Notes: generated by a model not told the origin, from the letters alone. A DNA stretch of 64,000 nt from Squalus acanthias (GCA_030390025.1 CM059430.1:61504001-61568000), one strand, 5' to 3'; shown: positions 14,541-33,769, counted from the first letter of the stretch. A program made the numbers and translations.

Positions 14541-17500
14541 GCAGTCTGGGATAGTCTCGTTGTCCACAAACTCCCACTTACTAAAATCCCGACACAGTGC
14601 CTGTATTGCCAAGTCTTCATTAATTAATTAATTAATTAATTAACTTATTTCATTGTTGGTTATCTGTAGTTTATTTCTTGAACTATTTGGTCACTTGAGG
14701 TCTAGATTGAATAAATAGGTAGATTTAGCTCAATGTTTGGTAAATTAGCAGTTAGTTACTGTGATTAACTGATTCGCTATTTATCAGTCATTAGTGTCTT
14801 TAAATTGCCCTAGTGCAATAAGATGTCTTTGGGTCCAAATGGTTGGAGCCTCTCCAGTTTAGTCGAAGAAAGAATACGGGTGGACGAATATTATTTCACT
14901 GTTCTCGTCGCAATTACTGCTTCGCTGCTCCCATTTGTTTCCGTAGAAATACCGAATACGATGTATCCCGCAATGCGACCGCGTAATTTTAACCATTCCA
15001 GGTTCACAGTGTCCAACTTTCTCTTCAAAGAGCAAACTTTCATTTGAATTGGTTTCGCCCATGGCATAAATTCTGATGGTGGATTTTGAGTACAAATCAA
15101 TGTCAGATGTTAATGGGCCTCCAACGCGTCTCGTATTTATAATTCTACGACCAGAACTTTCTCTCTCAGTCACTTCATTTTACATCAGTAAAATATAAGA
15201 CATATGAAAGGTTTACACACTCGATACAACTTGACACGTATAAATATCAACATTTAGATTTATTGAAAAATGTCGTCAGCTGGAAACATTCATCCATCAA
15301 GATACGTGTCAGGCCGCAAAAAATACTGACATGAAGTGTCAGCTACATCCCTCTCCTCCTTCTTAATACTGCATTTACATAGAAAGCAATAAGCTCATTA
15401 TATACAGGAGCCAACTAGCAGTTACCTTTGTATAATCTAATGCTGCAGAAAGAGTGTGTAGCGAAGTATAATGGAAACCGGCTGTAAGCGAGTACTGCAG
15501 GAACCCTTTATCCGTTTCGATTGCGGCTCCTTCATCGCGTTCCCTGCTTTCGTATGTTGCTGCTTTTAATTCCCAGCTGTGCCTGGACAGGCGTTATTCT
15601 TTCCCAAAGGCTAACCTATTGCTCTCGTGGAATTTTGAGCAGCGGAGGCAGAGATTATCAGCAGTTCTTTACCTGGCCATTAAAAACAACATTCAGAATC
15701 ATAGAATCATAGAAATTGAAGGCACAGTAGGAGGCCATTCGGCCCATCGTGTCTGTGTTTTTCAATAATGTAATTACCTTGTTTATTTTTTCTATTTTCC
15801 ACCCACACGCGGTGCCCTTTAGAACACGTCAGCATCAATATAAATAGACTCACAGACACACTCACAACTGCATAAATATCCAACTATTATTAAATTAAAG
15901 AAACGTTCTTCAATTATATCCTTTAATTGTGATTCGACAATAATTATCAAAATAATCTTACATTAAATCATTCTAGGACTAAGACAAACTTTCCTCTATT
16001 TTAAATAAATATGCCGTCATCTCAGGATGTCAAAAAAATATTAGGATGCAAAACTTACATTTATGTTTAATAACTTTCATTCGGCGATATTCTTTCACTC
16101 ATAATGATTGTGTATGTGTAATTGTGCACTTTATCTTTTCTATATTACGAATAAATTGATATAAACATTAACAACCGATTACCTAAATCAGAACCGATGT
16201 CGCACTGAATCGTTTCCACTGCACTTAATGTAGAATGATATTGATATAAAAATACTGCTCTTAGTTATATGAATATCTGAATGAGAACCTTCGAACCGTC
16301 TGCACTCACCTGATGTCCAATACTCCCTTGCACGCATACAATTACATTTCACACTGAAAAAATCCACATCTTAAGGAACCCTTGGGTATACCACCGAGCC
16401 ATACAAATCAGAAGATGCCAGGTTGGATTGCCTGTCTGTGTTGTGTTAAATGATCCCAGTTCCTGCAGCAGTTGAAACGATAAAACTGGCCTGAGCGCCC
16501 AGGGAGAGGAAGAGGGCAATTGACATTATATCCTGCTTGTGACTGTTACCCAGGGGCCGCTGCTAGAAATTGCAAGTCTAATGAGAACGGGATCGGGATC
16601 GACCATGTGATGCCTGTCGGTACTCACACTCTATGCCCACACGGGAACATAAGAACATAAGAAATAAGAGCAGGAGTAGGCCATTTGGCCCTTCGAGCCG
16701 GATCCGCCATTCAATAAGATCTTTTACCTCATATCCACTTTCCTGCACTATCTCCATATCTCTTGATCCCCTTAATATTCAAAAATCTATCGATCTCTAT
16801 CTTGAATATACTCAACGACTGAGCCTCCACAGCCCTCTGGGGTAGAGAATTCCAAAAATTAACCACTCTCTGAGTGAAGAAATTTCTCCTCATCTCAGTC
16901 GTAAACGGCCGACCCCTTATTCTGAGACAGTGACCCCTGGTTCTAGACTCCCCAAGAAGGGGAAAATTTAACCTGTTAAGCCCTGTAAGAATTTTGTGTG
17001 TTTCAATGAGATCACCTCTCATTCTTCTAAACTCTGGAGAATATAGGCCTAGTCTACTCCAATCTCTCTTCATAGGACAATCCCCCCACCCCTGGAACCA
17101 GTCTGGTGAACCTTCGTTGCACTCCCTCTATGGCAAGCATATCCTTCCTTAGGTAAGGAGAAAAAAACTGCATGCAATTCTCCATGTGTGGTCTCACCAG
17201 GGCCCTATATAATTGCAGTAAGATGTCTTTACTCTTATACTCAAATCCTCTTGTAATAAAGGCCAACATACTTCTTTCCTAATTGCTTGCTGTACCTGCA
17301 TGTTAACTTTCAGTGATTTGTGTACCAGGACACCCAGGTACCTCTGAACACCAACATTTCCGTATCTCTCAACATTTAAAAAATACTCTGCTTCTCTATT
17401 TTTCCTACCAAAGTGGATAACTTCACATTTATCCTCATTATATTCCATTTGCCATGTTCTTTCCCACTCAGTTAGCCTGTCTATAACCCCTTGAAGCCTC

Positions 17501-17789
17501 CTTGCATCCTCCTCACAACTTACATTCCATCCAGCTTTGTATCTTCAGTAAACTTGAACATATTACATTTGGTCCCCTCATCCAATTCATTGATGTAGAT
17601 TGTGAATAGCTGAGGCCCAAGCACTTATCCTTGTGGTACGCCAGTAGTTACAGCCTGTCAGCCCAATAATGACCTGTTTATTCCTACTCTCTGATTTCTG
17701 TCCGTTAACTAATCCTCAATCCATGCTAATACATTACCCCCATCCCATGAGCCCTAATTTTGTTTACTAACCTCTTATGTGGCACCTTT

Positions 17790-19345
17790 ATGGAATTTAA
17801 TACAGAGAAGTGTGAGGGGATGCATTCTGGGAGAAGGAACAGGGAGAGACAATATACACTTAATGGCACAGTTTTAAAGATTGTGCAGGGACAGAGTGAC
17901 GTGGGAGTTAATGTGCATAGATCCCTGAAGGTGGCAGGACATATTGAGAGAGTGATTAGCAAAGCATATGGGATCTTGGGCTTCATAAATAGAGGTATTG
18001 AGTACAAAAGTAGAGAAGTTATGCTCAACCTTTATAAAGTGCTGGTTAGGCCGCAACTGGAGTATTGCATCCAGTTCTGGTCACCACACTTTAGGTGGAT
18101 GTGAAGGCCCTTGAGAGGGTGCAGAGGAGAATCACCAGAATGGTTCCGGGGATGGGGTATCTTAGCTACAAGGACAGGTTGCCGAAGCTGGATTTGTTTT
18201 CATCAGAGCAAAGGAGGTGGAGGGGTTATTTGATAGAGGTGTACAAATTACGACTGGTTTTGATAGGCTAGTCGGGGAAAGGCTGTTCCCACTAGTTGAT
18301 GGTACAAGAACTAGGGGACACAGATTTAAGGTTTTGGTCAAGAGATGCAGGGGCATGTGAGGAAAACCTTTTTACACAGTAAGTGCTGAGGACCTGAAAT
18401 TCACTGCCTACGGAGGTGGTGGAAGCGGAGACACTCAGGGCTGGATTTTGTCTTGGGGTCGGGTCTTCCGCATTCCGTGTTATCCACCCGCCTGAAATTG
18501 GATGTGGGAGATTGATGCAATTTTCACTTAATTGGGCAATTGAGTTCCAGCATGTGGGAACCCATGAACCAATTAGTGGTTTCAGTCTGAAAGTCGCCTC
18601 TGATGATGTCATCATTGTAGGTCACAGACTGCCTGGTCTGGTCTCAGAGATTGCCTGGCCTTTGCTGTGAGACGACCTGGATGCAAAATGCAGCATCTCA
18701 GCAGAGAGAGAGAGAGAGAGAATTTTTTTTTTCCATCCAGGTCCTCCAAAGGCCCTGGCAGTCTCTGAAGACATTCAATGCAGTAGCATCAGAGGCGACT
18801 TTCAGACCTAATACTACTACTACCTTCACACATCTCCATTGTAATAGTGGACCTGCAGCTGATAGTCAGCTATCCACTTGTGCTCCTGACAGGTTTCACT
18901 GGCGTGTTTCACATCAGGCGTGCTTCACGTCGGAAAAGAGTTAAACTGGCTAAAACATTTCAAAATGGCATTGCAGAGCCAATTTAGGGCTTGTTAAGGG
19001 CTTTAATGGCCTCTCCCGCCTCTTGGAGGCGGGACGGAGTCGGGAACACCTCACATGATTTTATCAAAATTGCGTGGAGGCGGGTTGGAGGCGGGCTGTT
19101 GTCGGGAATCCCCGAATCTGCAACTTTAACCCCCCACACGCCTCCAAACCCGACTCCACGGGTCATTGAAAATCCAGCCCTCAATATTTTCAAGGGAAGA
19201 CTGGATAGGAACTTGAAGGAAATAAACTTGCAGGGCTACGGGGATAGAACGGGGGAATGGGGCTGACTGGATTGTTCTACAAATAGCTGACAGGGATGCG
19301 ATGGCCGAATGACCTCCTTCTCTGCTGTATGACTCTATGACTCCA
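17790..19345 (+). mobile_element. 5'-truncated CR1 carrying a MITE insertion
   Basis: MEFNTEKC...LVRPQLEYCIQFWSP; tail tatgactctatgactc. Confidence 0.85.
18438..19180. mobile_element. PIF/Harbinger-type MITE (743 bp), TSD TCA
   Basis: Perfect TIR GGGCTGGATTTT/AAAATCCAGCCC flanked by TCA on both sides; removing it restores the CR1 3' sequence. Confidence 0.9.
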
Positions 19346-19911
19346 TGACCTTATCAAATGCCTTCTGAAAATCCAAAGCAACCACATCCACTGGTTCCCC
19401 CTTATCTATTCTGCGAGTTACATCATCAAAAAATTCTAACAGATTTGTCAAACACGATTTCCCTTTCATAAATCCATGTTGACTCTGCCCAATCGTATTA
19501 TTATTTTCTAATTGCCCTGTTACCACGTCCTTAATAATAGTTTCTAGCATTTTCCCTACGACTGATTTCAGGCTAACTGGTCTGTAGTTCCCCGTTTTTC
19601 TCTCCTTCCTTTTTTAAATAGTAGGGTTCCATTTGCTACCTTCCAATCTGCTGGAACCATTCTAGAATCTATGTAATTTTGGAAAATGACAACCAATGCA
19701 TCTACTATCGCTATAGCCAACTCTATCAAAAGTATAGGATGTAGCTTATCGGTTCCAGTGGATTTATTGGCTTTCAGTCCCATTTATTTCTCCAGTACTA
19801 CTTTTTTACTAATACTAATTTCTTTCAGTTCCTCATTCTCGCTAGACCCTTGGTTCTCCACTATTTCCGGGAAGTTTTTTGCGTATTCTTCTGTGAAGAC
19901 AGACACAAATT

Positions 19912-21411
19912 GGGCAGGATTTTCCAACCCTCACGTGTGTGTACGAGGTGTGTACGCACCCGTAGAGGCCTTGCAAGTGTCGGGTTTAGGCATGTGAAGC
20001 ACATGCGCTAAAACCCGGCACTTCTGATCTGTCAAGAATTCTTTTGACAGATCATCCATCTGCTCACGAAAAGGGCCTCCGCAGGTTGAGAGTTGCGCTT
20101 TCTGCACAACTTCTGCCCGCTGAAAACCTTTAAAAATCTTACGCCTAGTAAGGCCTGCTTTTACCAGCATAAGAGTTTAAAAAAATAAAAAATAATTTTT
20201 TTCACTCATTTATAATTTAAAAATACTTTTTAAAATGTAAGTTTCTTTATAGTAGCGTAAAAAACTTTAATTATTTTTTTCAAAAAATTAAATTTTATTT
20301 TAAATATATAATTTAATGGGCCGTATTTTCCAGTCGGAGGCTTCCCGCGTGCAGAGGCCTCCGATGTGGAAATAATCTATGGACTTATCTGAGGGCTCCC
20401 TAGGTCAGCACACTTCCAATGCTGGGCCTCTCCAACTCGAACTGCATAGGTCCCACGTATCCCAGGGGCGCATGCGATTTGCAAGCGTCCCTGGGATCAC
20501 GTGGGCCATGGGGAGCCAATCAAAGAAGGGAATCTCCCTTCATACACTTGACAGATAGACCTGTCAAATATATGAATGGAGATCACACCCAGAAACACTG
20601 TAAAACATTAAATAAAATTAAAAAAACATCACATTTTTAAAATTAGTTGAAATTACAATAAATTAAATATCTTAAACAAAATTTAATTTTTTGAGAAAGT
20701 AATTAAAGTTTTTTACGGGACTAAAAATTAACTTACTTTTTTAAAAGTATTTTTAAATGATAAATGAGTGAAAAATATATTTTTTTACTTTTATCAAATC
20801 TTATGCTGGTAAAAGCAGGCCTTACCTGCATAAGACTGCTAAGGGTTTTCTGCGGGCGGAGGTTCTCCAGAAAGCAGAACTATCTGCCCGCAGATGCCCT
20901 TCTCTAGGGCAGGCATCCGATCTGTCAAGAGCATTCTTGACAGATCGGAAATGATGGTTTTCAGCGCATGAGCTTTGCATGCCTGAAACTGGCATTTCCA
21001 ATGTCCCTACGGGTGTGTACACAGCGCGTACACATCCGTAGGGATCAGAATAAACGGCCGAATGTAATTTTTACTAATTTTAAATAAGTGATTTAAAAAG
21101 AAAATTATTTAATGTTTAACTGTGTTTTTTACGTAATACCCATTCATACTTTTGACAAATCCGTGCGTAGAGACCTGTCAATAGTGTGAAGGGGGATTCC
21201 CTTCTTTGATTGGTTCCACATGGCGCATGTGAGCCCAGGGGTGCTTGCGAACCACATTCGCCCATGGGATACTTGGGCCTCTGTGCATTTCGGAGAGCAG
21301 AGGCCCAAGATCGGAAGTCTCGGGACCTATCGAGCCAGCAGGTATGTTCGTAGATTTTTTCCGATCGGAGGCATCCACACGTAGGAAGCCTCCGATTGGA
21401 AAATAAGTCCC
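19912..21411. mobile_element. Harbinger-type MITE containing an inverted copy of the same family (20318-21060, TSD AAT)
   Basis: Outer TIRs gggcaggattttccaa/ttggaaaataagtccc; inner gggccgtatttt...taaacggccg flanked by AAT; inner halves are reverse-complement homologs of the outer halves. Confidence 0.85.
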
Positions 21412-22289
21412 AAAGTTTTTGTTTAATTTCTCAGCCTATTCCTTATTCCCATTATAGTTTCTGCTGTCTCAATCTGTAAGGGGCCCACATTTACTTTCGC
21501 TAATCTTTGCCTTTGTACATACCTATAGAAGCTTTTACAGTCTGTTTTGATGTCGCTCACTAGTTTACTCTCGAATTCTATTTCCTTTCTTTGTCATTAT
21601 CTTGGCCCTCCTTTGCTGAATTCTAAAATCCTCCCAATCCTCAGGCTTACTACTGTTTTTGGCAACATTATAAACCTCTTCCTTTGATTATAATACTATC
21701 TTTATCTTCTCTTGTTAGCCTCGGTGGGACCACTTTTCCTGTGGGGTTTTTGTGCCTTAAAGGAATGTATATTTGTTTTAAATTATGTATCAATTCTTTA
21801 AATGCTAGCCATTGCTCGTCCACTGTCATAACTTTTAATGTAGTTTCCCAATCTACCTTAACCAACTCGCCCCTCATACCTATGTCGTTTGCTTTGTTTA
21901 GATTTAAGACCCTAGTTTCGGATTTAACTAAGTCACTTTCAAATTCAATATAAAATTCTATCATATTATGGTCACTCTTTCCTAAGGCCCCTTTACTACA
22001 AAGTTCTTAATTCTCAGTGGCCACGTGGGAAACATATGGAGAAGGCTGTGGATATCCCAGCAAGAATCTGCGCTTTGAGAAGAGGAGAAAACAGGCGAAA
22101 ATGGCAAAGTAACCACACGAAAACAGCGCACTCTGAGAGGCATGTATACCAGATTAAAGCATTGTCTCAGAATACCAACCTCGCAGTTTTTGCTGATGTT
22201 AAAGCAATAATGAACAAGAGCACTCGGAAAGTGGCACCTGTGATATGAAATATTCAACCATACATATAAACCATCGAAAATACAAGACA

Positions 22290-22720
22290 AAAGTTGCATT
22301 TATACAGAACCTTTTATCACGACAGGACGTTCCAAAGAGTATTTCCAAAGGACTATAGAATGTTCCAAACAACAATTGAAGTACTTTTGAAGTGTAGTCG
22401 CTGTTGTAATGTAGGGTAAAGCAGTAGCCTATTTGCACACAGCAAGCTCCCACAAAAAGCAATGAGATAAACGACCAAATAATCGGTTTTAATAAATTGG
22501 ATTGAGGAATAATTATTGGCCAGGACACAGGGGAGATCTTCCATGCTCATCGACAAAATAGCGCCATGGGATCTCTTACATCCACCCAAGAGGGCAGACG
22601 GGTCTCATTCAGTGCTGCGCTGCAATATTAGCGTGGAGTTTGTGCTCAAGTCTCTGAAGTGAGAACATGAACCCACAACCTTCTGACTCAGGACAAGGAG
22701 CTACCACTGTGCCAAGGCTC
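22290..22720 (-). mobile_element. Deu-domain SINE (SacSINE1/AmnSINE-like)
   Basis: tRNA-like head at about 22660-22715 (reverse complement tggcacagtggtagc...gtgggttca); Deu core ggatgtaagagatcccatggcgctat...ccctgtgtcctggccaa. Confidence 0.7.
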
Positions 22721-25700
22721 AAAATTGCGTCCGATGTTCAGCGTTTACTATTTGAATTGTCCTGTAGGAAACTGAATTAAATATGAAAATTGTCATGTTA
22801 AAGTATCGTTTTTCTATGTTGTCAGCAATTTGGTGGCAAAGCGTTTTAATCGTTAATCTTAAATTACATAGAAGCATTGATTAGTTCAGTGCAGAGGTGG
22901 GCCTTTCAGCCCATCGAATCTGCGCTGGCTTTTTCAAAGAGCAATACTGTTAGCTTCACTCCCCCACTCATTCCTCATGATCCTGCAATTTTATTCTCCT
23001 TCAAGTATTTATCCAATACCCTTTTGAAGGCTACTATTACAACTGTATCTACCTCCCTATCCAAATCCTAACCACTCGATGCATGAAAATATTTTTCATA
23101 AGAACATAAGAAATAGGAGCAGGATTGGCCATAGGCCACTCGAGCCTGATCCACCATTCAATAAGAACCTGGATGATCATCGACCTCAACTTCACTTACC
23201 CACCTGATCCCCATATCCCTTGATTCCCTTAGAGTCGAAAAGATCTATCGATCTTAGCCTCTCAGCATTTACCCTGTCAAACCCTCTCAGAATATTTTAT
23301 ATTTCAATGAGATTACCACTCATTCTTCTAAACTCCAGAGAGTTTAGTCCCAAGCTACTCAATTTCTCCTCATAGGACAACCCTATCACCCCAGAAATCA
23401 ATCTAGTGAACCTTCGTTGCACCCCCTCTAAGGCAAGTATATGATTCCTTAGGTACGGAGACCAAAGCTGTACACAGTACTCCAGGTGTGGTCTCACCAA
23501 AGTGCTGTACAATTGCAGCACGACTTCCTTACTTTAGTACTCCAACTCCCCTGCAATAAAGGTCAACATACCATTTACCTTCCTAATTGCTTGCTGTACC
23601 TGCATGTTAATGTTCTGTGATTCGTGTACAACGACAGCAAAATCCTTCTGAACACCAGCATTTAATAATTTATCACACTTAAAATAATCTGTTTTTCTAT
23701 TCTTCCTACCAAAATGAATGACCTCACAATTCCCCACCTTATACTCTACCTGCCACCTTCTTGCCCATTCACTTAACCCGTCTGTATCTCTTTGCAGACT
23801 GTTTGTGTCCTCCTCACAGCTTACTTTCCCACCTAGCTTTTATTGTCAGCAAACTTGGATACATTACACTCGGTCCCTTCATCTAAGTCATTAATATAAA
23901 TTGTAAATAGCTGAGGCCCCAACACTGATCCTTGCAGCACCCACTAGTAACATCCTGTCAGCTTGAAAATGACTTGTTTATCCTCGTCTCTGTTTTCTGT
24001 CCTTTAACCAAACCTCTATCCATGCTAATATATTACCCCCCAACCCCATGTGCCCTTATCTTGTATAAAAACCATTCGTGTGGCACCTTATCGAATACCT
24101 TTGGAAAACCCAAATATACTACCTCCACTGGTTGGCCTTTATCTACTCTGCGAGTTACATGCACAAAATACTCTAATAAATTTGGTAAACACGATTTCCC
24201 TTTCGCAAAACCATGTTGACTCTGTCTAATCATACTATGATTTTCTAAGTGCACTGTTAACAGTTTTTTAATAATAGATTCCAGTATTTTCCTGGTGACT
24301 GATATCAGGCTAACTGGCCAGTAGTTCCCTGTTTTTTCACCTTCCTTTCTTGAATAGCGGTGTTACATTTGCTACCTTCCAATCCACTGGGACCATTCCA
24401 GAATCTAGGGAATTTTGGAAGATCACAATCAATACATCCACTGTTTCTGCAGGCACCTCTTTTAGAACCCTAGGATGTAGGCTATCAGGCCCAGAGGATT
24501 TGTCGGCTTTTAGACCCATTAATTTCTCCAATATTTTTTCTTTACTAATATTAATTACTTTAAGTTCCTTACTCTAATTAGTCACTTGATTCCCTACTGT
24601 TGATGATATATGTTTTGTTTCTTCTACTGTGAAAGCAGTTACAAAATAATAGTTTAACGTCTCTGCCGTTTCCTTATTTCTCATTATAATTTCTCCTGTC
24701 TCAGCGTCTAAGAGACCCACATTTACTTTCACCACTCTCTTCCTTTTTACATACTTTTAGAATCTTACAAATTTTTTTATATTTCTTGATACTTTACTCA
24801 CAGATTCTATTTTCTCTATTTATTAATTTTTGGTCATCCTTTGCTGGTTTTTAAAAGTCTCCCAATGCTCGGGCTTACTACTCCTCTCGGCAACATTGTA
24901 AGCCTCTTCTTTTAATCTATTACCATCCTTAACCTCTGTAGTTAGCCACGAGAAAAGGTCACCTTTTCCGTGGAGTTTTTATTTCTCAATGTAATCTATA
25001 TTTGGTGAGAATTATGAAATATTTTTAAATGTTCGCCATCTTATCTTTTAATCTAATTTTCTAATCTACCTTAGCTAACTCGCCCCTCATACCTTTGTCA
25101 TTGGCTTTATTTGTAATACTCTAGTATCGGACTTAAGTATGTTACTCTCGAACTCAACGTGAAATTCTATCATATTATGATCACTCTAGCCCCAGAGGCT
25201 CCCTTACTATGACATTACCTCATTACACGAGACAAGTTCTAAAATAGCCTGTTCCCTGGTTGGTTCCACGAAATATTGTTCGAGGGAACTGTCTCAAATG
25301 GATTCCCTGAACTCGTTTTCCAAACTACTTTTGCCAATTTGATTTGTTCAGTCTATATGAAGATTGACGTCCCCCACGATTGTTGCAGTACCTTTGTTAC
25401 AAGTTCCTCTTATTTCATGATTAATACTCTGTCCAACAGTATAGCTACTGTTGGGGAGCGGGCTATAAACTACTTCCACCAGTGTTTTCTGTCCCTTGTT
25501 ATTTCATTTCTCCACCCATACTAATTCTACTTCCTGCTCTTATGAACCAAGATCCTTCCTCAATATTGTCCTTATGTCATCCTTTATTATTAGAGATACC
25601 CCCTCCTTTTCCATTTTGTATGTCTTTTCGAAACGTAAATTACCCTGGAATATTTAGTTCCCAACCTTGGTCACCATGCACCAACGGCGATCTATTGGCT

Positions 25701-26534
25701 ATTAGATCAAACCAGTTTATCTCAATTTATGCCATTAATTCGTCTGTTTTGTTATGAATGCTTTGTGCATTAAGATAAAGTGCCTTTAATTTTAGTGTTT
25801 TATTATTTTTTCCTGATTTAGGTTTACTGATGCATTATTACTGTCCATTTCTGCCACACTCTGTTTATCATTACCTAAATTACAACACTGCTCTATGGCC
25901 TTGACTTTTCTCTATAGATTTATACATTTCCCCTCACCAGCACACTCCCCACTTTTCACTTTAAAGCCCTGTCTACAGCCCTAGTTATTCGATTCAGCAG
26001 GACATTGGTCCCAGCCCGGTCTAATTGGAGACTGTCCCAACAGAAAAGCACCCTCTTTCCCCAGTACTGCTGCCAGTGCCCCTTGAATCATAACCCCTAA
26101 TTCCCACACCACACTTTCAGCCATGTATTCAACTCTCACTGTTTGACCCGATGCTAATTTGTGCTTATCTCAGCTAGTAATCCAGAGATCATTACCTTTA
26201 AGATTCTGCTTTTCAATTTGGACCCGAGCTCCTCAAACTCCCTCAGCAGAACTTCATTCCTAGGTTTCCTTATGTCGTTGGTTCCTACGTGGACTACGAC
26301 AGCTGGATCATCTCCCTCCCACTCCAAGTTCTTCTCCAGCTGCGAGGAGATGCCCTTAACCCTGGCACTGGGCAGGCAGCACCACCTTCGGAACTCCTGT
26401 TTGTGGCCAAAGAGAACATTATCTATCCCCATGAATAAACTGTCCTCTACCACGACCACAATCTATTTCACTTCACTCACCGGAATAGCCTCCTGTACCA
26501 CGGTACTGTTGTCAGTTTGCTTATCTACCCATAA

Positions 26535-26895
26535 TAACAACAGAAAATGCTGGAAAAACTCAGCAGGCCAGGCAGCATCCGTGGAGAGAGAAAGAGAGTT
26601 AACGTTTCAGGTCGATGACCTTTCGTCAGAACTGTGAAGAGCCGGAAATCAAATAGATTTAAGGCCAGAGTAAAGCTGGGAAAAGGGGGAGGGGATAAAA
26701 GAACAAAGGGGGAGATGAAGAGACATTAAGAGACATTAAGAGATATGCAAGGCTAGAGGTGGTGTTAATGTGACAGATTAAGGCTGAAAGAAGTGTGAAA
26801 TCCACTGGCAGAATGAAGGACAGCTGCCAGCTTCTAGGAGGAAAAAAAAGGTGGGGGGGGGGGCAAATAAAAGGGGTGGAAAAAATAAAATATAA
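26535..26895 (-). mobile_element. Penelope-like pLTR fragment inserted in CR1 ORF1
   Basis: aaatgctggaaaaactcagcaggccaggcagcatc...gttaacgtttcaggtcgatgacc; the same repeat flanks the GIY-YIG fragment at 62.6 kb. Confidence 0.75.
26597..26633 (-). ncRNA. Minimal type I hammerhead ribozyme motif (Penelope pLTR)
   Basis: AGUU-CUGACGA-A-AGGUC(AUC)GACCU-GAAAC-GUU-AACU: intact core, 5-bp stem II, 4-bp stem I, palindromic AACGUU in place of stem III. Confidence 0.65.
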
Positions 26896-27619
26896 ATCTA
26901 CCCTGCAGACTTTGACTTCATCTACACAGGCAGCAAGAACCTAGTACCTGTTGGATAACAGCAAGGGCTGAGGTTCCTCCAGCACTGCTCCTGACTTGCC
27001 TGACTCACAGTCACACCCTCCTGTCCATTAACACGAACCAGACCTGTGCCACTACCTAACCTAAGGGGTGTGACTGCCTCCTAGATCAAAGTGTCCAGTA
27101 ACTCTCCCCCTCCCTCCAGTTTAGCAATTCTGAGCTGAAATTCCTCGAGATGTAGACACTTACTGCAGATACGTTTGTCCAAGATCCTGATGCTCCCCAC
27201 AAACTCCCACATGCTGCAGTTGCGACACACCTTCTGCCATTCCTATATAACGTTGTTTTATTTATTTAATCAATTGAAGTTTATGTAATTAACCAACTTT
27301 TATTTATATTCTTTATTTTTTAACTAATTACTTGATCTAATTTAAGTTATAGGTATATTAAATTAAATAATTAGCTGCAACTTACCCCGCCACCCTTCCT
27401 TCTGCTGTGCCACCACTTTGCGATTTTTCTATCATGCCGCTCTCGGCTTCACCGTTTTCTTAGATCTCAGATCTATTTGTTTAACTAACGTGTACTATGG
27501 TCGTAATACGCTGATAGATGAGAAATTAAACAATTAAATATGATTCCTCAGCTCCCGCCACTCCTCACTCTATACTGACATTGATGTCATTTTTTGAGTT
27601 TTTCCCTCCGTTTGTCTGG

Positions 27620-27740
27620 TAACAGCTGCTGCTCTCTGCCCCGCTCCTTTTAATCAGCTGCTGCTCTCTGCCCCGCTCCTTTTAAATCACTGGTGCTCGG
27701 GATCCCGCTCTTTTTAATCAGCTGCTGCTCTCTGCAGCTG
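27620..27740. repeat. Short tandem repeat, about 32-bp unit x3-4 (CR1 5' end)
   Basis: cagctgctgctctctgccccgctccttttaat repeated. Confidence 0.8.
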
Positions 27741-27827
27741 CTTACAAAGAAACAGCTGGCAAAAATAAATGTCTCATCTCGGTAAAACCAATCCTATCTG
27801 TGTATACTTCGAAGGTGATTTCCTGAA

Positions 27828-30800
27828 TTAATAAAGCGTTTTCTTACCTTCATTGGAAGTTATTTTTACGTGGTCCACAATAATTCCCGTCAGTGCAAGA
27901 ATTATCAAAAAACCCAGAACAAGCCGAGCAATCAGGAGGAACCGGATGCTGAAACTGTGACCTACAATGTTGGATTAAAACCAAGATATAAAACTGTGGT
28001 ATATAAGTATTATCGAATGGAAGCAACAGTGATTGGTTTATACAGGGGCATGGGGTTCATTAAATGGCTACTTTAAACCGAACTCCATGGGGGCGATTTG
28101 AACTTGCCTAAATCGGCGTTAACGGTGCGAAAAGGGCTTCAAAATTGGATCGGTAGACTTAGCAGCATGTTAACGCCCACAACGGAGTCTTCCACTGCCA
28201 GAGAGGGCCTGTTGCTCGGGGCTTTCGCCTTTGTCTCAGGCAGTAGGCTACTCTTCATATCCAAATCGAGGTTCTATGATGAATAGAGGATCCCGATAGC
28301 CATTTCAGGACAAAACTGGTACGCCCTGACCTCTGAGGTCAGTTTTACTAGCGAGAGAGATAAAGAGATCTGAACATGTACATTGAAATTATTTTTGCGT
28401 GACTAGGAAAAGCAGGAGTGCTCCTGTGGGCCCCATAAAGATAATCTGGAATGCTGCAACCCGCCCACGAAACCTCCCCCCACCCGCACCCCAACCCGCC
28501 ACTACCTGATCTTGACACTCCCGGTTTAGCTTGCTGTCCAGCAGGCTGTCTCTGGAGACCTGCGAAGTGTACACGCCTTACATGCATTAAGGTTCCTCAT
28601 TTTCATACAAGTAGCCTGGCATATTCTCCCTTTATAGGAGACTAATTCTCACCAGCACAGGGGCCAAGTGCCAATTATTTTCGATCTGCACAATAATCTC
28701 CACCATTCCTTAATTTTATTCTAACTTCCACAGTGATCAAAACAGTTCCGAACATTTCATAAACTGTTATTTATTGGTCTAAAGGGTCCATAGCTATAGT
28801 GGTAGCCAGAGTAAATCCATCAATTGCTCCAACAATCTACAAGAAATTGAGGAGAAAAGTTGCTCAGTGGATGAAAGAAATCCAGGTAATAGTTTCCTTA
28901 TACTTTTGGAAGATATTTGCAGAAGTTCTGCGCGTGAGGCTTTTGAAGCAAATTCAGCCTCATGGCATTCGGGGAGAATTGGAAAGTGATAAATAAAGGT
29001 TCTGTCTGGGGAGCAGTGGATTTCTAGACAGAGCTCTACCCGGTCTATTTTAGGTTCAATGCTGTCTCGTCTATTGATGAACTATATGGAGGAGCCACTT
29101 CTAGTAATAGTCCTAGATGTGCTGATGGCGTCAATACATAGATAGAAGAGATGTAGGTTAATAACACTCCAAGAAATCTGGGTCATCGAAGAAATGCCCT
29201 TGAAAGATATTGGTGGCAGATCCACGCAAAGTCTGTTCAAATCTTACCTTGCTTAACGGTGTAGCTGACATTGGCGGGCACCGGAAGAGAGACATGAGAT
29301 ACCAGACATGTATAAACAACTCCGCTCTGGGCAGGCTGTGCTTCTTCCAACGAACTGGTAACCTCAAACAGTCCCTCCGCGTTCCTGTTTTTCACAGTTG
29401 CTATTCCGGTCAGATTTTCGACACCATCTCTTCGCCAGGAGATTTCTAAATGCTCCGGGTAAAAGGCAGTCGTTTTACACTCGAGCTTTAGAGAAGTCGC
29501 TGAAATCCCTTCAACAGGAGCGATTTTCAGGGGAGTTGGGGGAACTTGAACAGAAAAAAAGTTTTTTGAAATTTAAAGGAACACATTCTAAGTTGCCTAC
29601 TCTCGTTATACTGTTACAGTCCGACTGTCACAATAGTTATCCGTGTTGTCGTTTATTTTAAACTTCGAGTTTGCATTTATTTTGTACATTGTTTTACGGC
29701 GCACAGCGAAATACGGGATGTATTGGAAACGGTACGCAAAGAGGGTGAATCTCCCAGGGCTGCTAACATGCAGGGAGGCACGCGCCACTGTTCTGAATGG
29801 AGTATCAGATCCTGGCGCGGGATTGTGGTTGGCAGCAGTGACCCCGAGTGAGGTTCCTGTCCGACTATATCGGAGAGAGCGCAGCCCAGTCTGAACGAAC
29901 AGTGGAATCGCTTCTCGTTATTCATTGATAATCTTTGGAGTATTAAACATTTTGTGTGTTTAATTAGAACTTGGTCGCTTTTTAGATATTTGATACATTG
30001 CAAACATATTTTATATAAACGGTGAATATTGAGAAGAATAATTCTTACCAATATATCGAAATATCTCTGATGTCTACACAGATTGCAGACAGGATGCTGT
30101 TATATCTATAGATTAATATTCGTGCATTAAGTTGCTAACTCAGCATTTCAGTGTCTGTGGTGGAGATTTCAAATCGTGCAGCTTTCACGAAATGTACTTT
30201 CCCCAGAGCGCGAACCGAGGGCTGGAATATTTTTCACTTCATGACAGGGTTATATTGGTAATAATGTATCTCTATGTAGATCACAACATCCATATAGATG
30301 AGGGAATCTGAATAGGAAATCCCAACTCAGAGTGCATGTCTTATATAATTCCAGGGGTTTTGTCCTTCCCCAAGTCTATTCCGTCTGGTGAACACGTTTT
30401 GCCTGAAGAAGATTCTGCTTATATCAGTCCTACAATCGTCTTTTACGAATGTGAACCTTTGTCCGCTAGAGCTACAGTCACTGTTTAGCTGGAAATAGAG
30501 TCCCTTATTAGGTTTGCATTGTTCTGTCAGTTTATTACAAACAATCGCCTTCACATCTTTTCTTTAAATGTTTACTTTTCCGACTTTGTAGTAATAGCAA
30601 ACATTTAAGTTAGGGGTATTATTACATTGGAAAGTTATTTTAGCCTTTATTCCCAGCAGCACCGTGTTGACTGCCCAACCAAAGCTCAGAAGTCCTCCAT
30701 TCTTTACCACTGATCTGTTTAGGTATAATATGTAATGCGGTAGAATTTCCGTGGAGGAGGAGGACGAAAGTGTTCACTTAATCTGCTGCCGTAACTTCAG

Positions 30801-32582
30801 TCTGGGATTGGTAGAATGGAAATGGAAATTAGATTTGCAAATACGGGAGTCCAGGCGTTTATAGCAATTTCGGCGACAATCTGCCCAATTGGCGTAAGAC
30901 AGATGTTCAAACAGGAGCATTGGGTTTCTACACTCTCCTGCAAGGTCTAGGACTTGGGGTGGAATCCAGCATTGAGGGTAAGACCAACACTTCCCCTTTC
31001 AATGAACTATAAGATTCCTTTGTGAAATGAGTTCGGCAGTCTCAAATAAGTTCTCAACGAAAGCAAGTGAACAGCTTAAATTGCGGATATAGGAACAGGA
31101 GGAGACCATTTAGCCCCTCGAGTCTGCTCCGCCATTCAATTAGATGATGGCTGATCTGTACCTCAAATCCATTTGTCCACTTAACTCCACATCCCTTGAT
31201 AACCCCACCTAACAAAAATCTATCCATCTCCATCTTGGAAGCTGCAATTGTCCCATCATCCACAGCCTTTTGGGAGAGAGAATTCCAGATTTTGGACAAT
31301 CCTGTACAGAAAATATTAGATTGGCAATTTCAAGCTGTGGGGCCAAAATGTGCCCTGGTGTGTGCAATAACCACGATTGTAGCAGGACATTGTTCTGTTG
31401 AGTTTGTGATGAAGGCACCTTGTTGGAGCGGCGGAGCTTGCCTTTAATGAAGTATAAAATACCTGACCTCGGAGGTGTTAGAATTGTTCCCATTGTCGCT
31501 CCTTGGCACCGCTATTTTGGTGAGAAGGAATTTGGCCATCTAATCCCAGTTATTAATTTCAAACCAAGATTTAAAAATTTATACTATTTCAGTATCTTGC
31601 CTCCTTAATAATTAGAAGTCGCACAACACCAGGTTATAGTCCAACAGTTTTATTTGAAATTACGAGCTTTCGGAGCTCTGCTCCTTCTTCAGGTACAGTG
31701 AGGGAATATTAATAATTGTAACTGCACTTCCAAAAGAACTCATTGGATGCAAAGCACGTTGGAATGCCATGCAGACAATGAAGGGGGGAAATTGATCTGG
31801 GGCGGTAGCGCAAACCGGGCGCTAGCGAATCGGCTGGCCGTTGTACACCGGGGTGAATAGAAAAGAAAATCGGGAGAAGTGTAAAACGAATTTGCTATCA
31901 CCTGGTTTTCGTCAAGTGATAAAAGTTCAAATTACCCCCACTACTGAGTTTTACATATATCGCAAACTGCTGAGAATCTCCCACTCCCCGGCACAATGAC
32001 ACTTACCGTACACAGTAAGCTGGGAGCCACTTCCATCTCCAATAGATTTTTGATGATGTTTTACTTTGCAGTAATACACTCCGGAGTCGGCGACACTCGC
32101 ATTCAGGAGATCAAATGAACCACTTCCCTTTTTTACATTAAATTGCTTTCTTTTGTCTGGCTCCAGAAACGTCTCCTCACCCCATCTCCGCCAATAAACA
32201 TCGGGGGCATCTTGAAATATTGGAAATGTGCAGAACATGGAAACATTTGTACTCCTGGTAACATTAATGTATTTCGGGAATTGATTCACTTTGATAGAAG
32301 TTACTTCAGCGGCTATCAGAAAATAAACAAAAACGCTGACATAATAGTTTGCATACTTGAGAAAATAAATATATAATGACTTAGAAATTTAAAAAAAACC
32401 AAGAAAATTACCACGTTACTAACACAATAAGAAAAACGGATGAAAGAAATGTGCACAAAATATGACAAATTGTTTTAACACTAGCCTTTATTCGCTAAGC
32501 ATGGAGCGGTAAGATAAACAAACACACCTCTGTAAAGAACTCCCACAAAAGATATGCAGAAAAGCGCGGAGCTCACCGCCAT
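27828..32582 (-). CDS. Non-rearranging VJ-C1-TM(Arg) immunoglobulin superfamily receptor (antigen-receptor/NKp30/SIRP-like); spliced CDS 32582-32528, 32312-32007, 29544-29248, 27961-27848 (or read-through to TAA at 27828)
   Basis: Four exons with GT-AG boundaries, all phase 1, join into one open frame: MAVSSALFCISFVGVLYR-AAEVTSIKVNQFPKY...YYCKVKHHQKSIGDGSGSQLTVY-VPPTPLKI...YTCLVSHVSL...TVKQ-GHSFSIRFLLIARLVLGFLIILALTGIIVDHVKITSNEGKKTLY*. The 3' end is uncertain. Confidence 0.88.
27848..27961 (-). CDS. Exon 4: transmembrane exon with intramembrane Arg
   Basis: Acceptor caacattgtag, donor G|gtaaga, 114 nt. Translates GHSFSIRFLLIARLVLGFLIILALTGIIVDHVKITSNE; phase matches the C1 exon. Confidence 0.85.
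28088..28652. mobile_element. Degenerate Harbinger-type MITE in the C1-TM intron
   Basis: Begins GGGGGCGATTT, ends AATTCTCACC; GC-rich interior resembles the other MITEs here. Confidence 0.4.
29248..29544 (-). CDS. Exon 3: Ig C1-set domain
   Basis: Acceptor tttttttctgttcaag, donor G|gtaaga, 297 nt open. LECKTTAFYPEHLEISWRRDG...GLFEVTSSL...YTCLVSHVSL carries the C1 signatures CxxxxFYPxxxxxxW and YxCxVxH. Not in the ORF track. Confidence 0.95.
31085..31300 (-). mobile_element. CR1 3'-end fragment
   Basis: IWNSLSQKAVD...KMEMDRFL plus the CR1 3'UTR hairpin region. Confidence 0.8.
31661..31695 (-). ncRNA. Minimal hammerhead ribozyme motif, second Penelope-type repeat family
   Basis: UAC-CUGAAGA-A-GGAGC(AGA)GCUCC-GAAAG-CUC-GUA: core, 5-bp stem II, 3-bp stem I, palindromic AGCU. 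Confidence 0.6.
31783..31939. mobile_element. Small MITE (about 157 bp)
   Basis: Imperfect TIR GGGGGAAATTGA / TCAAATTACCCCC. Confidence 0.6.
32007..32312 (-). CDS. Exon 2: Ig V-set domain with germline-joined J-like G strand
   Basis: Acceptor tttgtttattttctgatag, donor G|gtaagt. B-strand Cys (SMFC), C-strand Trp (VYW), DSGVYYC, and GDGSGSQLTV (GxG J motif) are all in one 306-nt exon. Confidence 0.95.
32528..32582 (-). CDS. Exon 1: signal peptide MAVSSALFCISFVGVLYR
   Basis: ATG in good Kozak context (agaATGG), hydrophobic 18 aa, donor G|gtgtgt in phase 1, 215-nt intron to the V exon. Confidence 0.8.
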
Positions 32583-32654
32583 TCTGAGTGACGAATATTA
32601 GACTGGCCATAAGCTGCAAGGAGCCACTTAGCTCCTGGAGCTTTGGAAGCCAGG

Positions 32655-32755
32655 GGTTTGCACGTGGTCTAGAGTGGCGTGTAATATCACGTGCCTAAAT
32701 GTACAATTTCAATTGATGTATTTCCTTTGTTACGACAGTATTGTGGGCGGAGAGT
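32655..32755 (-). promoter_or_regulatory. Probable proximal promoter of the VJ-C1 gene
   Basis: Two CACGTG E-boxes (32661, 32688) and a GGGCGG GC box (32745) lie 80-170 bp upstream of the ATG in unique, CpG-containing sequence. Confidence 0.35.
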
Positions 32756-33769
32756 CGTGCAGACTCAGGGTTTAATGCACCCATTTAAAAGATCTAGGAT
32801 ACTTAGGCGTATTGTAGTTACTCGTGTAACTCACCTACGCAAAAATGCCCCATTTTTAAAGCCATGTAACTTGTTTGCCTCCAGATTGCACTTCTCTCTT
32901 GGCGGAAACGCGGAGACAACTCCGGACTGTGAGTGCTCCTTTCTTGTTCTTGTAGTGATAAAGCGTTATTGATTGAACTGGTGTATTTTGTTCCGCCTAT
33001 TCCTACAGCAAACCCTGATCAGTGTAAAATAAATCTCCTGCCTGTGCGTTGAATGCCCGTGCGCCTTTACGCTAACCAATCGAGATCTCCATGTTAATGA
33101 GCTTAAAAGCATAAGTCAAAATCCATCGACTCACATTCTGCTGTAAATAGGAGGAGCCTATTTGTCTGATCCACGGTTGTGCAAATGTAACAACACGCTT
33201 GACTTCAGCTGTGATGGTGAACTGTCGGGTGAACTGACTGGCCGACCTCATCCCTATTAACCTTCTGGTCTTATTACCGATGAACGTTGAAACTAACAAA
33301 TGAGAAAACAAGAGTGAAAGTGGAACGGCAGATCGTGTGGACTATAGTTATTTTGTGCGTTATAGTGAATCCCGTCATCCTGTTGCCCGATCATAGCTCC
33401 CAGATCCACCTGAATTCACAAATGCTGTCCTAGTGGCTTCTATTAAATGATTGCAGTGTCTACCATAGCCTATGAGTATCCCATAAGCACCATCCTCCGA
33501 TCACATACTCCGGTGTGAGTTTGGTTTACATATGTAAGTTCAGTGAACATTCATGCTGCCACTAAACCCATTCACTATATATCTGTATTGTTTCAGATTG
33601 CATGCTTGCTTACCATGACCTGGTCGCTTATTTGGTGAAGCCATTGTCCTTGGAGTCTTCTGTATTAGGTGACCTCAGAGACAAATATTGCAGTAGTGGC
33701 ATGATTGAGCTAAGTGCCCCTGCACTGGACAAAACAGTAATCAATTAGGCTTGGGTTGTCATCCATATC

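What the first reader, a model, noticed from the sequence alone, without database searches (positions are those of the whole stretch)
27828..32582. Intact non-rearranging VJ-C1-TM gene: a one-gene mimic of a T-cell receptor chain in a shark
Seen in sequence: four phase-1 exons (leader, V, C1, TM) join in frame without stops, amid otherwise decayed repeats. The V exon already contains the J-type GxGxxLTV strand, and I found no heptamer-spacer-nonamer RSS next to it. Established: C1 domains are largely confined to Ig, TCR, MHC, B2M, tapasin, SIRP and some B7 proteins. Single-exon VJ domains occur in NKp30/NCR3, SIRP and non-rearranging genes proposed to resemble the pre-RAG antigen-receptor ancestor. 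NKp30 has no C1, SIRPs are typically V-C1-C1, and shark UrIg is antibody-like. Inference: this V-C1-TM(Arg) gene belongs to a little-characterised or undescribed family of germline-encoded antigen-receptor-like chains in cartilaginous fish. Automated pipelines would probably mislabel it as SIRP-, tapasin- or Ig-light-chain-like.
Basis: partly seen in the sequence, partly recalled or inferred. Interest (0 to 1): 0.9.

Follow-up and report, generated by a model that had tools for sequence, protein, structure and literature searches.

The report
Shark activating VJ-C1 paired receptor gene
This is an intact shark gene for a membrane receptor with an antibody-like V domain (already joined to its J strand) and one C1 domain; it is the activating member of a large, unnamed family of paired immune receptors found across sharks, rays and chimaeras.

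Summary
On the minus strand, leader, V (with an in-exon GSGSQLTV J strand), C1 and TM exons are open, all phase 1, with GT-AG borders and no credible RSS.

Two corrections:
- The TM exon ends in a consensus donor at 27848.
- The gene is not a lone TCR-chain mimic. It belongs to a multigene VJ-C1-TM family found here in 21 cartilaginous-fish species. RefSeq labels its members inconsistently: SIRP-alpha-like, NCR3LG1-like, tapasin-related-like, Ig-lambda-like, TCR-beta-like.

The family is paired. Inhibitory members have uncharged TMs and several ITIM-like tyrosines. Activating members, including this gene, have a conserved Arg...Asp/Glu-His TM and no tyrosine motif.

SIRP membership is inconclusive: Ig light chains, UrIg2 and SIRP-alpha score about equally. 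My nine counted paper searches found no description of the family; the key closed papers could not be read. RNA evidence was uninformative.

The scan's first readers noted the same kind of gene on other pieces of this genome.

The parts
32528..32582 (-). Exon 1: start codon (32582) and signal peptide, 18 codons plus 1 base, donor GT
   Evidence: The ATG has A at -3 and G at +4. The length matches the orthologues' leaders.
32007..32312 (-). Exon 2: V domain with the J-like strand (GSGSQLTV) in the same exon, phase 1 at both ends
   Evidence: V-set 2.9e-9. 72-76% identical to Heptranchias and Heterodontus relatives. Keeps the family-invariant W, D, C, G-x-G and V.
29248..29544 (-). Exon 3: C1-set domain (FYPEHLEISW ... 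YTCLVSH), phase 1 at both ends
   Evidence: (C1-set 1.4e-9). 79-81% identical to Heptranchias P0165 and P0173.
27848..27961 (-). Exon 4: short stalk without Cys, TM with conserved Arg (IARLVLGF...) and an Asp-His at the inner end, start of the tail; ends in donor AAG|GTAAGA
   Evidence: 69% identical to P0165; R and D/E-H are kept in 9 of 9 activating-type models.
27828..27847 (-).
   Evidence: No RNA data to choose between the two ends.
15611..15672 (-). Probable exon 5: AG acceptor at 15674-15673, encodes (G)KELLIISASAAQNSTRAIG, stop TAG at 15613-15611
   Evidence: tblastn of the C-termini of four shark relatives: E 5.6e-4, 76% over 17 aa with P0165, the only hit below E 1. Sequence read. 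Translation. Frame closes by arithmetic.
15259..15264 (-). Candidate AATAAA poly(A) signal about 350 nt after the exon-5 stop
   Evidence: Read. It is a motif only and was not tested.
32840..33049 (-). Conserved upstream non-coding stretch (candidate 5' exon or promoter), followed by AG|GTGAGT
   Evidence: 63% match to the mis-called N-terminus of Heptranchias P0173. Has a stop in that frame here. Sequence.

Best explanation
The gene encodes a type I membrane protein. Its parts are a signal peptide, a germline-joined VJ-type V domain, one C1 domain, a short Cys-free stalk, a transmembrane helix with a conserved arginine toward the outer leaflet and an Asp-His at the inner end, and a short tail without tyrosine motifs.

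It is the activating member of a multigene family of paired receptors spread across cartilaginous fish. The inhibitory paralogues carry very similar ectodomains, but have an uncharged TM and a long tail with three to four ITIM/ITSM-like tyrosines.

Inferred mechanism:
- The V domain binds a ligand.
- Inhibitory members would recruit SH2 phosphatases through their tyrosines.
- This member cannot signal by itself and would pair, through its TM arginine, with an acidic-TM ITAM adaptor (FcR-gamma/CD3-zeta-like more likely than DAP12-like).

Shown: anatomy, family membership, the two TM/tail types and their conservation. Inferred: adaptor coupling, phosphatase recruitment, expression and ligand.
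For: - Anatomy and domains.
- Family size: a full HMMER scan of 1.84 billion representatives with the V exon gave 293 hits at E<=1e-3. Many are 250-390 aa proteins at 40-82% identity.
- Taxon range: every family protein I had named (19 of the 20 asked about) is chondrichthyan, from sharks, rays and Callorhinchus. The other named one, Callorhinchus P0135, was never confirmed as family. The remaining three of the 23 looked up are reptile multi-Ig proteins.
- Word-index searches: 31 of 31 hits and 36 of 38 hits are chondrichthyan.
- Best orthologue: Heptranchias P0165, with V 72%, C1 79% and TM 69% identity.
- Two forms: the ITIM-like tails and the activating TM motif are tabulated.
- Activating TM: R-[LF]-x-L-x-[FV]-L-[VIL]-[IL]-L ... 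[DE]-H is kept in 9 of 9 activating-type models from Scyliorhinus, Heptranchias, Carcharodon and one unnamed source, and in the window.
- Conservation: the window keeps 5 of 5 invariant and 17 of 18 near-invariant family residues.
- Branch lengths: its end branches (0.097 for V, 0.072 for C1) are below the tree medians (0.16, 0.12), so there is no sign of decay.
- Paired-receptor pattern: in both trees activating and inhibitory forms group by species or subfamily (Scyliorhinus P0164/P0163; P0039/P0057; P0026/P0036), as expected of paired receptors that exchange ectodomains.
Against: - No expression evidence. The three small runs of the same species label (kind 'RNA?' is a guess) laid contigs only on intronic and downstream repeats and none on any exon.
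- In some orthologues the residues before the Arg are not hydrophobic. The Arg may therefore sit at the membrane edge rather than in the core, which weakens the adaptor inference.
- Adaptor genes were not looked for.
- Near-invariant G39 is Ser in the window.
Confidence: 0.72

Rival explanations
1. It is simply the cartilaginous-fish SIRP family. The inhibitory members would be SIRP-alpha co-orthologues and this gene a SIRP-beta-like activating member that has one C1 domain instead of two.
For: - SIRP-alpha (2wng) aligns colinearly over V plus C1 with natural family members: P0011 residues 26-210, 62 bits, E 4.6e-16; P0165 residues 40-218, 51 bits.
- With the family profile it scores 106 bits, and SIRP-gamma 95.
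- The ESM Atlas places inhibitory P0151 next to two SIRP-alpha clusters (0.96, 205 of 256 features).
- RefSeq's commonest label for the family is SIRP-alpha-like.
- From memory only: the four-tyrosine tail pattern resembles SIRP-alpha's, and a chicken SIRP with V plus one C1 has been reported.
Against: - Whole Ig light chains score about the same as SIRP with the profile (about 92 bits in one stretch). The lambda FR3-J-C piece scores 72.9 bits and UrIg2 129 bits.
- With V alone, SIRP is not among the best 60 of 191 sequences or of 5020 sequences. The best single V domains there are shark IgNAR V, TCR and CD79b.
- With C1 alone, SIRP is not among the best 60. MHC class II beta gives the best single-domain score, 44.7 bits.
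- The tail-less orthologue P0165 sits nearest an 'Ig kappa light chain-like' V+C1 cluster, with SIRP only fourth. The Atlas SIRP signal is therefore partly tail-driven.
- The TM has Arg plus Asp-His, not the mid-TM Lys of SIRP-beta (recalled).
- No tetrapod SIRP was reached by the two family searches, though that tool's word index limits its reach.
Confidence: 0.3
2. It is a surviving relative of the pre-RAG antigen-receptor chain. On this reading it is a TCR/Ig-like chain that pairs with a partner chain through its C1 domain and signals through CD3-like subunits.
For: - VJ in one exon plus a true C1 domain is the antigen-receptor layout.
- The best solved matches include Ig light chains and UrIg2.
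- Unchecked first-reader notes report family genes lying among Ig light-chain clusters on other pieces of this genome.
- The family predates the elasmobranch-chimaera split, since Callorhinchus has members.
Against: - No membrane-proximal Cys.
- Only one TM Arg is conserved and there is no R...K pair.
- Most family members carry ITIM-like tails, which antigen receptors never do.
- The CDR3-like loop (KVKHxxKSIGDGSGSQLTV) is nearly the same in Heterodontus, Heptranchias and Scyliorhinus relatives. That fits one conserved ligand, not a repertoire.
- No Ig light-chain exon lies in this window.
Confidence: 0.08
3. The family is secondarily derived from an Ig light-chain cluster. That cluster would have been joined in the germline (recalled: RAG-mediated germline joining is known for shark Ig genes) and later gained TM and tail exons, so the non-rearranging state would not be primordial.
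For: - Lambda/kappa light chains are the best single-stretch V-J-C matches of the family profile.
- The nearest Atlas cluster of P0165 is light-chain-like.
- RefSeq labels several members 'immunoglobulin lambda-1 light chain-like'.
- Unchecked notes report embedding in light-chain arrays.
Against: - The scores are no better than for SIRP or UrIg2.
- The V-only profile does not favour light-chain V domains.
- The family is old and diverse, with chimaera-specific and elasmobranch-specific clades.
- No footprint of a joint was sought or seen.
Confidence: 0.1
4. The gene is an unexpressed or dying copy. It looks intact, but it is stranded in a repeat-filled cluster, with a 12-kb LINE-laden last intron.
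For: - No contig of three same-species runs lies on any exon.
- Scan notes describe dead or frameshifted exons in neighbouring family genes.
- Near-invariant G39 is replaced.
- An out-of-frame upstream ATG lies at 32610.
Against: - Five open exons with canonical borders.
- 22 of 23 conserved family residues kept.
- Short end branches in both trees.
- Conserved upstream region.
- The runs are small (about 120-130 million letters), of unknown tissue and not shown to be RNA.
Confidence: 0.1

Closest known systems
SIRP family (SIRP-alpha / SIRP-beta paired receptors)
   Same: N-terminal V domain with an in-exon J-like strand followed by a C1 domain. Inhibitory members have several ITIM-type tyrosines and activating members a charged TM and short tail. 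There is a colinear V+C1 alignment to solved SIRP-alpha and SIRP-gamma.
   Different: One C1 domain, not two. The TM has Arg plus Asp/Glu-His rather than a mid-TM Lys (recalled). V alone and C1 alone do not single out SIRP. The family is expanded to many genes per genome. CD47 binding is unknown.
Teleost NITRs and other paired Ig-like receptor families (KIR, LILR, CHIR, PILR) - recalled, not tested
   Same: Multigene clusters of receptors with similar ectodomains, split into ITIM-tailed and charged-TM forms. NITR V domains also carry J-like motifs.
   Different: NITRs have a V plus an I-type domain, or V only, and no C1. Passages of a 2019 review mention NITRs only for ray-finned fishes and as missing from the coelacanth, and say more may be found once better cartilaginous-fish genomes exist (PMC6795676, passages).
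UrIg / UrIg2 (non-rearranging shark antibody-like genes)
   Same: Single-exon VJ plus C1 domains in elasmobranchs. UrIg2 is the top solved match of the C1 exon by summed score (E 9.4e-17).
   Different: UrIg2 has many C1 domains and forms Fc-like homodimers (PMC12227049, passages). The best single UrIg2 domain scores only 28.5 bits with the C1 exon. The present family has one C1 and ITIM or charged-TM signalling ends.
NKp30 / NCR3
   Same: Non-rearranging VJ-type V domain. From memory: an activating receptor with a TM Arg that pairs with CD3-zeta/FcR-gamma.
   Different: NKp30 has no C domain. It is not among the best 60 solved matches of the V exon or of the V profile.
PRARP (chicken non-rearranging VJ IgSF pair, Fu et al. 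2019)
   Same: Cited as a non-rearranging VJ gene family (PMC10751288 and PMC11599192, passages). From memory: a VJ domain plus a C domain, a TM and a tail.
   Different: Could not be compared. The paper is not held and no PRARP sequence was available.

Membership tests
Chondrichthyan VJ-C1-TM paired-receptor family (unnamed; RefSeq 'PTPNS1-like', 'NCR3LG1-like' and other labels) | V and C1 domains clearly closer to family members than to anything else | tested here: met
   V is 72-76% and C1 74-81% identical to Heptranchias and Heterodontus members. The window sits inside an elasmobranch subfamily (V: 27 rows, support 91/98; C1: 28 rows, 96).
Chondrichthyan VJ-C1-TM paired-receptor family (unnamed; RefSeq 'PTPNS1-like', 'NCR3LG1-like' and other labels) | Family signature residues, including the J-like G-x-G, the VPPTPL hinge, FYP...W and YTCLVSH | tested here: met
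   5 of 5 invariant and 17 of 18 near-invariant columns are kept. The hinge PPTPL starts the C1 exon.
Chondrichthyan VJ-C1-TM paired-receptor family (unnamed; RefSeq 'PTPNS1-like', 'NCR3LG1-like' and other labels) | Activating-type TM (R ... D/E-H) and a tail without tyrosine motifs | tested here: met
   The window TM exon aligns with 9 of 9 activating-type models. There is no Tyr in exon 4 or exon 5; the read-through tail GKKTLY ends in a Tyr that is part of no motif.
SIRP | V domain plus two C1 domains in the ectodomain | tested here: not met
   Only one C1 exon lies between V and TM. No further Ig exon is present in the gene or the window.
SIRP | V and C1 domains group with SIRP domains rather than with other V/C1 families | tested here: inconclusive
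   SIRP-alpha is among the top solved matches for V+C1, but Ig light chains and UrIg2 score equally. SIRP is absent from the best 60 for V alone or C1 alone. No reference sequences were available for a tree.
SIRP | Shared synteny with the SIRP locus; CD47 as ligand | not testable with these tools
There is no binding assay.
T-cell receptor / Ig chain | Separate V and J segments flanked by RSS | tested here: not met
   The J strand is inside the V exon. Only chance-level heptamer/nonamer matches were found.
T-cell receptor / Ig chain | Membrane-proximal Cys for an interchain disulfide, and a TCR-type TM basic pattern | tested here: not met
   There is no Cys after the C1 domain. Only one Arg is conserved and there is no R...K spacing. 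The TCR pattern itself is recalled.
NKp30 / NCR3 | Single VJ domain directly followed by stalk and TM (no C domain) | tested here: not met
   A C1 exon is present.
UrIg / UrIg2 | VJ followed by several C1 domains in an antibody-like molecule | tested here: not met
   One C1 only, followed by a TM. UrIg2's high score comes from three summed domains of 12.6, 19.4 and 28.5 bits.
PRARP | Orthology to the chicken PRARP pair | not testable with these tools
   The paper is not held and no sequence was available.

The most novel reading that the evidence does not exclude
The gene belongs to an ancient family of membrane-bound, non-rearranging VJ-C1 receptors that predates the shark-chimaera split. The family is as close to Ig light chains and UrIg2 as to SIRP. 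According to unchecked scan notes, it lies interleaved with Ig light-chain clusters in this genome.

If both points hold, the family would be a living sister lineage of the rearranging antigen-receptor chains, or the common stock of SIRP and antigen receptors. It would already have ITIM/adaptor signalling, making it a new and experimentally tractable candidate for what the receptor looked like before the RAG transposon split its V exon.
Probability: 0.15. Interest if true: 0.85.

Novelty: new variant of a known kind. Interest (0 to 1): 0.55.

Why it matters
Single-exon VJ genes linked to a C1 domain are actively sought as relics of the receptor that the RAG transposon invaded (PMC12227049, PMC10751288, passages). 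The passages I read name UrIg/UrIg2, NKp30, PRARP, SIRP, CD79, CD8 and NITR. None mentions a large VJ-C1-TM family in cartilaginous fish.

If the family is confirmed and placed by proper domain trees and synteny, there are two possible outcomes:
- It pushes the SIRP-type paired-receptor system back to the base of jawed vertebrates.
- It adds a new non-rearranging branch next to Ig light chains.

It would also be a paired inhibitory/activating Ig-type receptor family in sharks. I found none described in the passages and search listings I read, and NK-type recognition in sharks is, from memory, poorly known.

For this one gene the value is more modest. It is a clean, intact activating member with a corrected five-exon model.

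Tried and rejected
- Paralogous exons or Ig light-chain exons in the window: none. The other tblastn hits were transposon-derived parts of the P0026 model, a shark SINE at 51276-51347 that also ends the P0054 model, and the conserved upstream stretch.
- Relics of an inhibitory TM or ITIM exons downstream of C1: the best hit had E 0.63, which is chance level.
- Idea that exon 5 is a decayed LTYAAL ITIM exon: a profile of that exon from 23 ITIM-tailed or long-tailed members scored the window's and three relatives' tails no better than shuffles. Shuffles reached the observed score in 161, 134, 192 and 189 of 400 trials; a fourth relative got no score. Rejected.
- Reptile proteins among the V hits (turtle, gecko, Sceloporus): these are multi-V/I-set receptors with ITIM tails and have no V-C1 layout. 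They are not orthologues.
- Reaching tetrapod SIRPs by sequence: the searches with P0151 and with the 34-row family alignment returned only cartilaginous-fish proteins plus two weak teleost multi-Ig proteins. The TM/tail search returned three Heptranchias proteins only. These tools need shared 5-residue words, so the blanks say little.
- RNA support: one run search and one read-laying run gave contigs on repeats only.
- MHC linkage: the white-shark MHC is on chromosome 19 (PMC10751288, figure legend). White-shark family members lie on a 193.5-Mb sequence. That suggests a different, larger chromosome, but I did not verify chromosome sizes.
- Literature, counted searches: searches found no paper describing the family.
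- Literature, passages read: PMC12227049, PMC10751288, PMC11599192, PMC6795676 and PMC11372145 (77, reference-list hit only).
- Literature, not held and so unread: PMC3709836, PMC4594805, PubMed 30770416, PMC10530332 and PMC6761025. Any of these, or the closed supplementary gene tables of PMC10751288 and PMC12227049, may mention these genes.

Full report
**What is in the sequence**

On the minus strand there is a clean gene.
- Leader exon: runs from the ATG at 32582 to 32528, 18 codons plus one base.
- V exon: 32312-32007, 101 whole codons, ending ...YYCKVKHHQKSIGDGSGSQLTVY. The J-like G-x-G-x-x-L-x-V strand is therefore inside the V exon.
- C1 exon: 29544-29248, starting PPTPLKI and containing FYPEHLEISW and YTCLVSH.
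- TM exon: begins at 27961.
- Every junction is phase 1, every border is AG/GT, and no exon holds a stop.

Supporting checks:
- Pfam calls V-set (E 2.9e-9) and C1-set (E 1.4e-9), both above their curated cut-offs. The TM exon matches no family.
- These two exons are the only Ig-motif open stretches of 60 aa or more in the 64-kb window (2 of 2).
- No exon has a paralogue elsewhere in the window.
- A heptamer/nonamer scan of 27000-33500 found three distinct weak sites, against 16 in the whole window. None is placed to separate V from J.
- The neighbourhood is LINE/reverse-transcriptase debris.

**A correction at the 3' end**

The TM exon ends ...TSNE with one further base, followed by GTAAGA, a consensus donor at 27848/27847.

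The closest relatives in other sharks end differently. After the TM comes G-K-x-R-L-x-I-S-A-S-A-A-x-N-S-x-R-x-x-x, seen in Heptranchias P0165 and P0173 and Scyliorhinus P0164. Heterodontus P0162 has the same end joined directly to C1.

A tblastn of those four C-termini on the window gave one hit below E 1, at 15673-15623 on the same strand (76% over 17 aa, E 5.6e-4). The DNA there reads ...tttttaatggccag|GT AAA GAA CTG ... TAG. That is an AG acceptor in phase 1, encoding (G)KELLIISASAAQNSTRAIG with a stop at 15613-15611 and an AATAAA about 350 nt further on.

The likely gene therefore has five exons over 17 kb, with a last intron of 12.2 kb full of LINE remains. By arithmetic it encodes 277 aa; the read-through form gives 263 aa.

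**Expression**

Their contigs lay only on repeats at 27.0-27.4 kb, 31.0-31.4 kb and 31.6-32.0 kb, and on none of the exons in the stretch laid (27000-32700; exon 5 lies outside it). This says nothing either way.

**What it belongs to**

A full HMMER scan of 1.84 billion representative proteins with the V exon gave 293 hits at E<=1e-3. Below some giant multi-Ig proteins, these include dozens of 250-390 aa proteins at 40-82% identity.

I looked up names for 23 of the stored proteins (20 asked about, plus three that came up as cluster members):
- Nineteen of the 20 asked about are family proteins from cartilaginous fish; the remaining one, Callorhinchus P0135, was never confirmed as family. The lookups and the two word-index searches together named 21 chondrichthyan species.
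- Sharks: Heterodontus, Scyliorhinus canicula and S. torazame, Heptranchias, Mustelus, Carcharodon, Cetorhinus, Hemiscyllium, two Chiloscyllium species, Stegostoma and Pristiophorus.
- Rays: Mobula (two species), Narcine, Hypanus, Hemitrygon and Pristis.
- Chimaera: Callorhinchus.
- Three are reptile multi-Ig receptors without a C1 layout.

Two word-index searches, one with a full-length member and one with a 34-row family alignment, returned 31 of 31 and 36 of 38 cartilaginous-fish proteins.

RefSeq's automatic names for one and the same family are:
- 'tyrosine-protein phosphatase non-receptor type substrate 1-like' (SIRP-alpha-like)
- 'signal-regulatory protein beta-1-like'
- 'natural cytotoxicity triggering receptor 3 ligand 1-like'
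- 'tapasin-related protein-like'
- 'immunoglobulin lambda-1 light chain-like'
- 'M1-specific T cell receptor beta chain-like'
- 'HLA class II ... DO beta chain-like'

Within each species the hits share one long sequence record (contig column), which is consistent with clustering. The scan's own notes place further family genes 0.4-15 kb before and 33-35 kb beyond this window (unchecked).

**Two forms**

Most members have an uncharged TM (…GCAGGILAILLLIIIL…). They also have a long tail with three to four tyrosines in ITIM/ITSM-like settings, with family consensus x-Y-A-x-L, TVYAQT, LTYAAL and TEYAEI.

A minority has R-[LF]-x-L-x-[FV]-L-[VIL]-[IL]-L…I-I-[VM]-[DE]-H and a short tail without tyrosine motifs. 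This is 9 of 9 activating-type models, from Scyliorhinus, Heptranchias, Carcharodon and one unnamed source.

The window's TM exon (HSFSIRFLLIARLVLGFLIILALTGIIVDH…) is of this second kind. Only its second Arg is conserved; the first is Ser or another residue in orthologues.

Placement of the window gene:
- The best overall orthologue is Heptranchias P0165 (V 72%, C1 79%, TM 69%).
- The window keeps 5 of 5 invariant and 17 of 18 near-invariant family residues.
- In separate V and C1 trees it falls in an elasmobranch subfamily (27 rows at 91/98; 28 rows at 96) with end branches shorter than the median.
- Charged-TM and ITIM forms group together by species or subfamily rather than by form. The C1 tree is the quick version because the careful run did not finish.

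This is the pattern of paired receptors.

**How it most likely works**

Shown: a signal peptide, a VJ-type V domain, one C1 domain, a five-residue Cys-free stalk, a TM with a conserved basic residue, and a tail with no signalling tyrosine.

Inferred from what is known of paired receptors (recalled, not tested):
- The ITIM-tailed paralogues would inhibit through SH2 phosphatases.
- This member would need an acidic-TM ITAM adaptor.
- An Arg in the outer third of the helix is typical of FcR-gamma/CD3-zeta partners, and a mid-helix Lys of DAP12 partners. I therefore favour the former.
- The CDR3-like loop is almost the same in Heterodontus, Heptranchias, Scyliorhinus and the window. That points to one conserved, perhaps self, ligand for this subfamily rather than a diversified repertoire.

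**Comparison with known families**

- SIRP is the closest named system in logic. It aligns colinearly over V+C1 with natural members: 62 bits with P0011 and 51 bits with P0165. With the family profile it scores 106 bits.
- Whole Ig light chains reach about 92 bits in one stretch with the same profile. A lambda FR3-J-C piece reaches 72.9 bits and UrIg2 129 bits.
- With V alone, the best single-domain matches are shark IgNAR V, TCR and CD79b, with neither SIRP nor NKp30 in the best 60.
- With C1 alone, the best single-domain score is MHC class II beta, 44.7 bits.
- The ESM Atlas puts the ITIM-tailed P0151 beside SIRP-alpha clusters. It puts the tail-less orthologue P0165 beside an 'Ig kappa light chain-like' V+C1 cluster, with SIRP fourth. 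Part of the SIRP signal is therefore the tail.
- SIRP's defining V-C1-C1 layout is not met.

I therefore do not file the gene as a SIRP. I say that it works like one and that membership is open. TCR-chain, NKp30 and UrIg membership each fail a defining feature (see the membership table). PRARP could not be tested.

**Literature**

Nine counted searches found no paper that describes this family.

From the passages I read:
- The 2025 UrIg2 paper, the 2023 cartilaginous-fish MHC paper and the 2024 CD28-family paper list the known joined-VJ genes without it.
- The passages I read of a 2019 review mention NITRs but describe no paired Ig-type receptor family in cartilaginous fish.

Five likely relevant papers are not held, and supplements were closed. 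'Undescribed' therefore means 'not found in what I could search'.

**Verdict**

This is a real, intact gene and a correct observation. It is the activating member of an old, expanded, SIRP-like paired-receptor family of cartilaginous fish, with a corrected five-exon structure.

First readers of this scan noted the same kind of gene repeatedly on other pieces of this genome, several times next to Ig light-chain clusters (unchecked). If verified, that linkage would raise the interest considerably.

Noticed in passing
window 32840-33049 (minus), and 32610-32613: A stretch 260-470 bp upstream of the ATG matches, at 63% on the protein level, the N-terminal 'coding' part of the Heptranchias model P0173. 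In this window it holds a stop in that frame and ends in AG|GTGAGT. It looks like a conserved non-coding 5' exon or promoter that was mis-called as CDS in that model. A possible acceptor (ccttgcag) and an out-of-frame upstream ATG at 32610 precede the main ATG.
   Followed up: partly
window 15426-15485 (minus): In the putative 3' UTR, the translation TAGFHYTSLHTLSAALDYTK resembles the last ITIM exon of a ray family member (8 of 20 residues, E 4), with Ser where the Tyr would be. The match is chance-level. It could be a relic of an inhibitory tail.
   Followed up: partly
window 51276-51347 (minus): A common shark SINE. The same element supplies the last 24 residues of the database model P0054, so that model's C-terminus is an annotation artefact.
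   Followed up: yes
window 15700-27800: The 12-kb last intron is filled with decayed LINE/reverse-transcriptase sequence in both orientations. Contigs of the three runs pile up on short repeats at 27.0-27.4 kb, 31.0-31.4 kb and 31.6-32.0 kb at very high summed depth.
   Followed up: no
database proteins P0033, P0047, P0101, P0107, P0112, P0125 (turtles, gecko, Sceloporus where named): Reptile receptors with two or three V/I-set domains and VTYADL...VVYAEV tails are the nearest non-chondrichthyan matches of the shark V exon (about 30-34% identity). They form their own clade in the V tree and have no V-C1 layout. Their automatic names (FCRL5-like, obscurin-like, ESAM-like) also look arbitrary.
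   Followed up: partly
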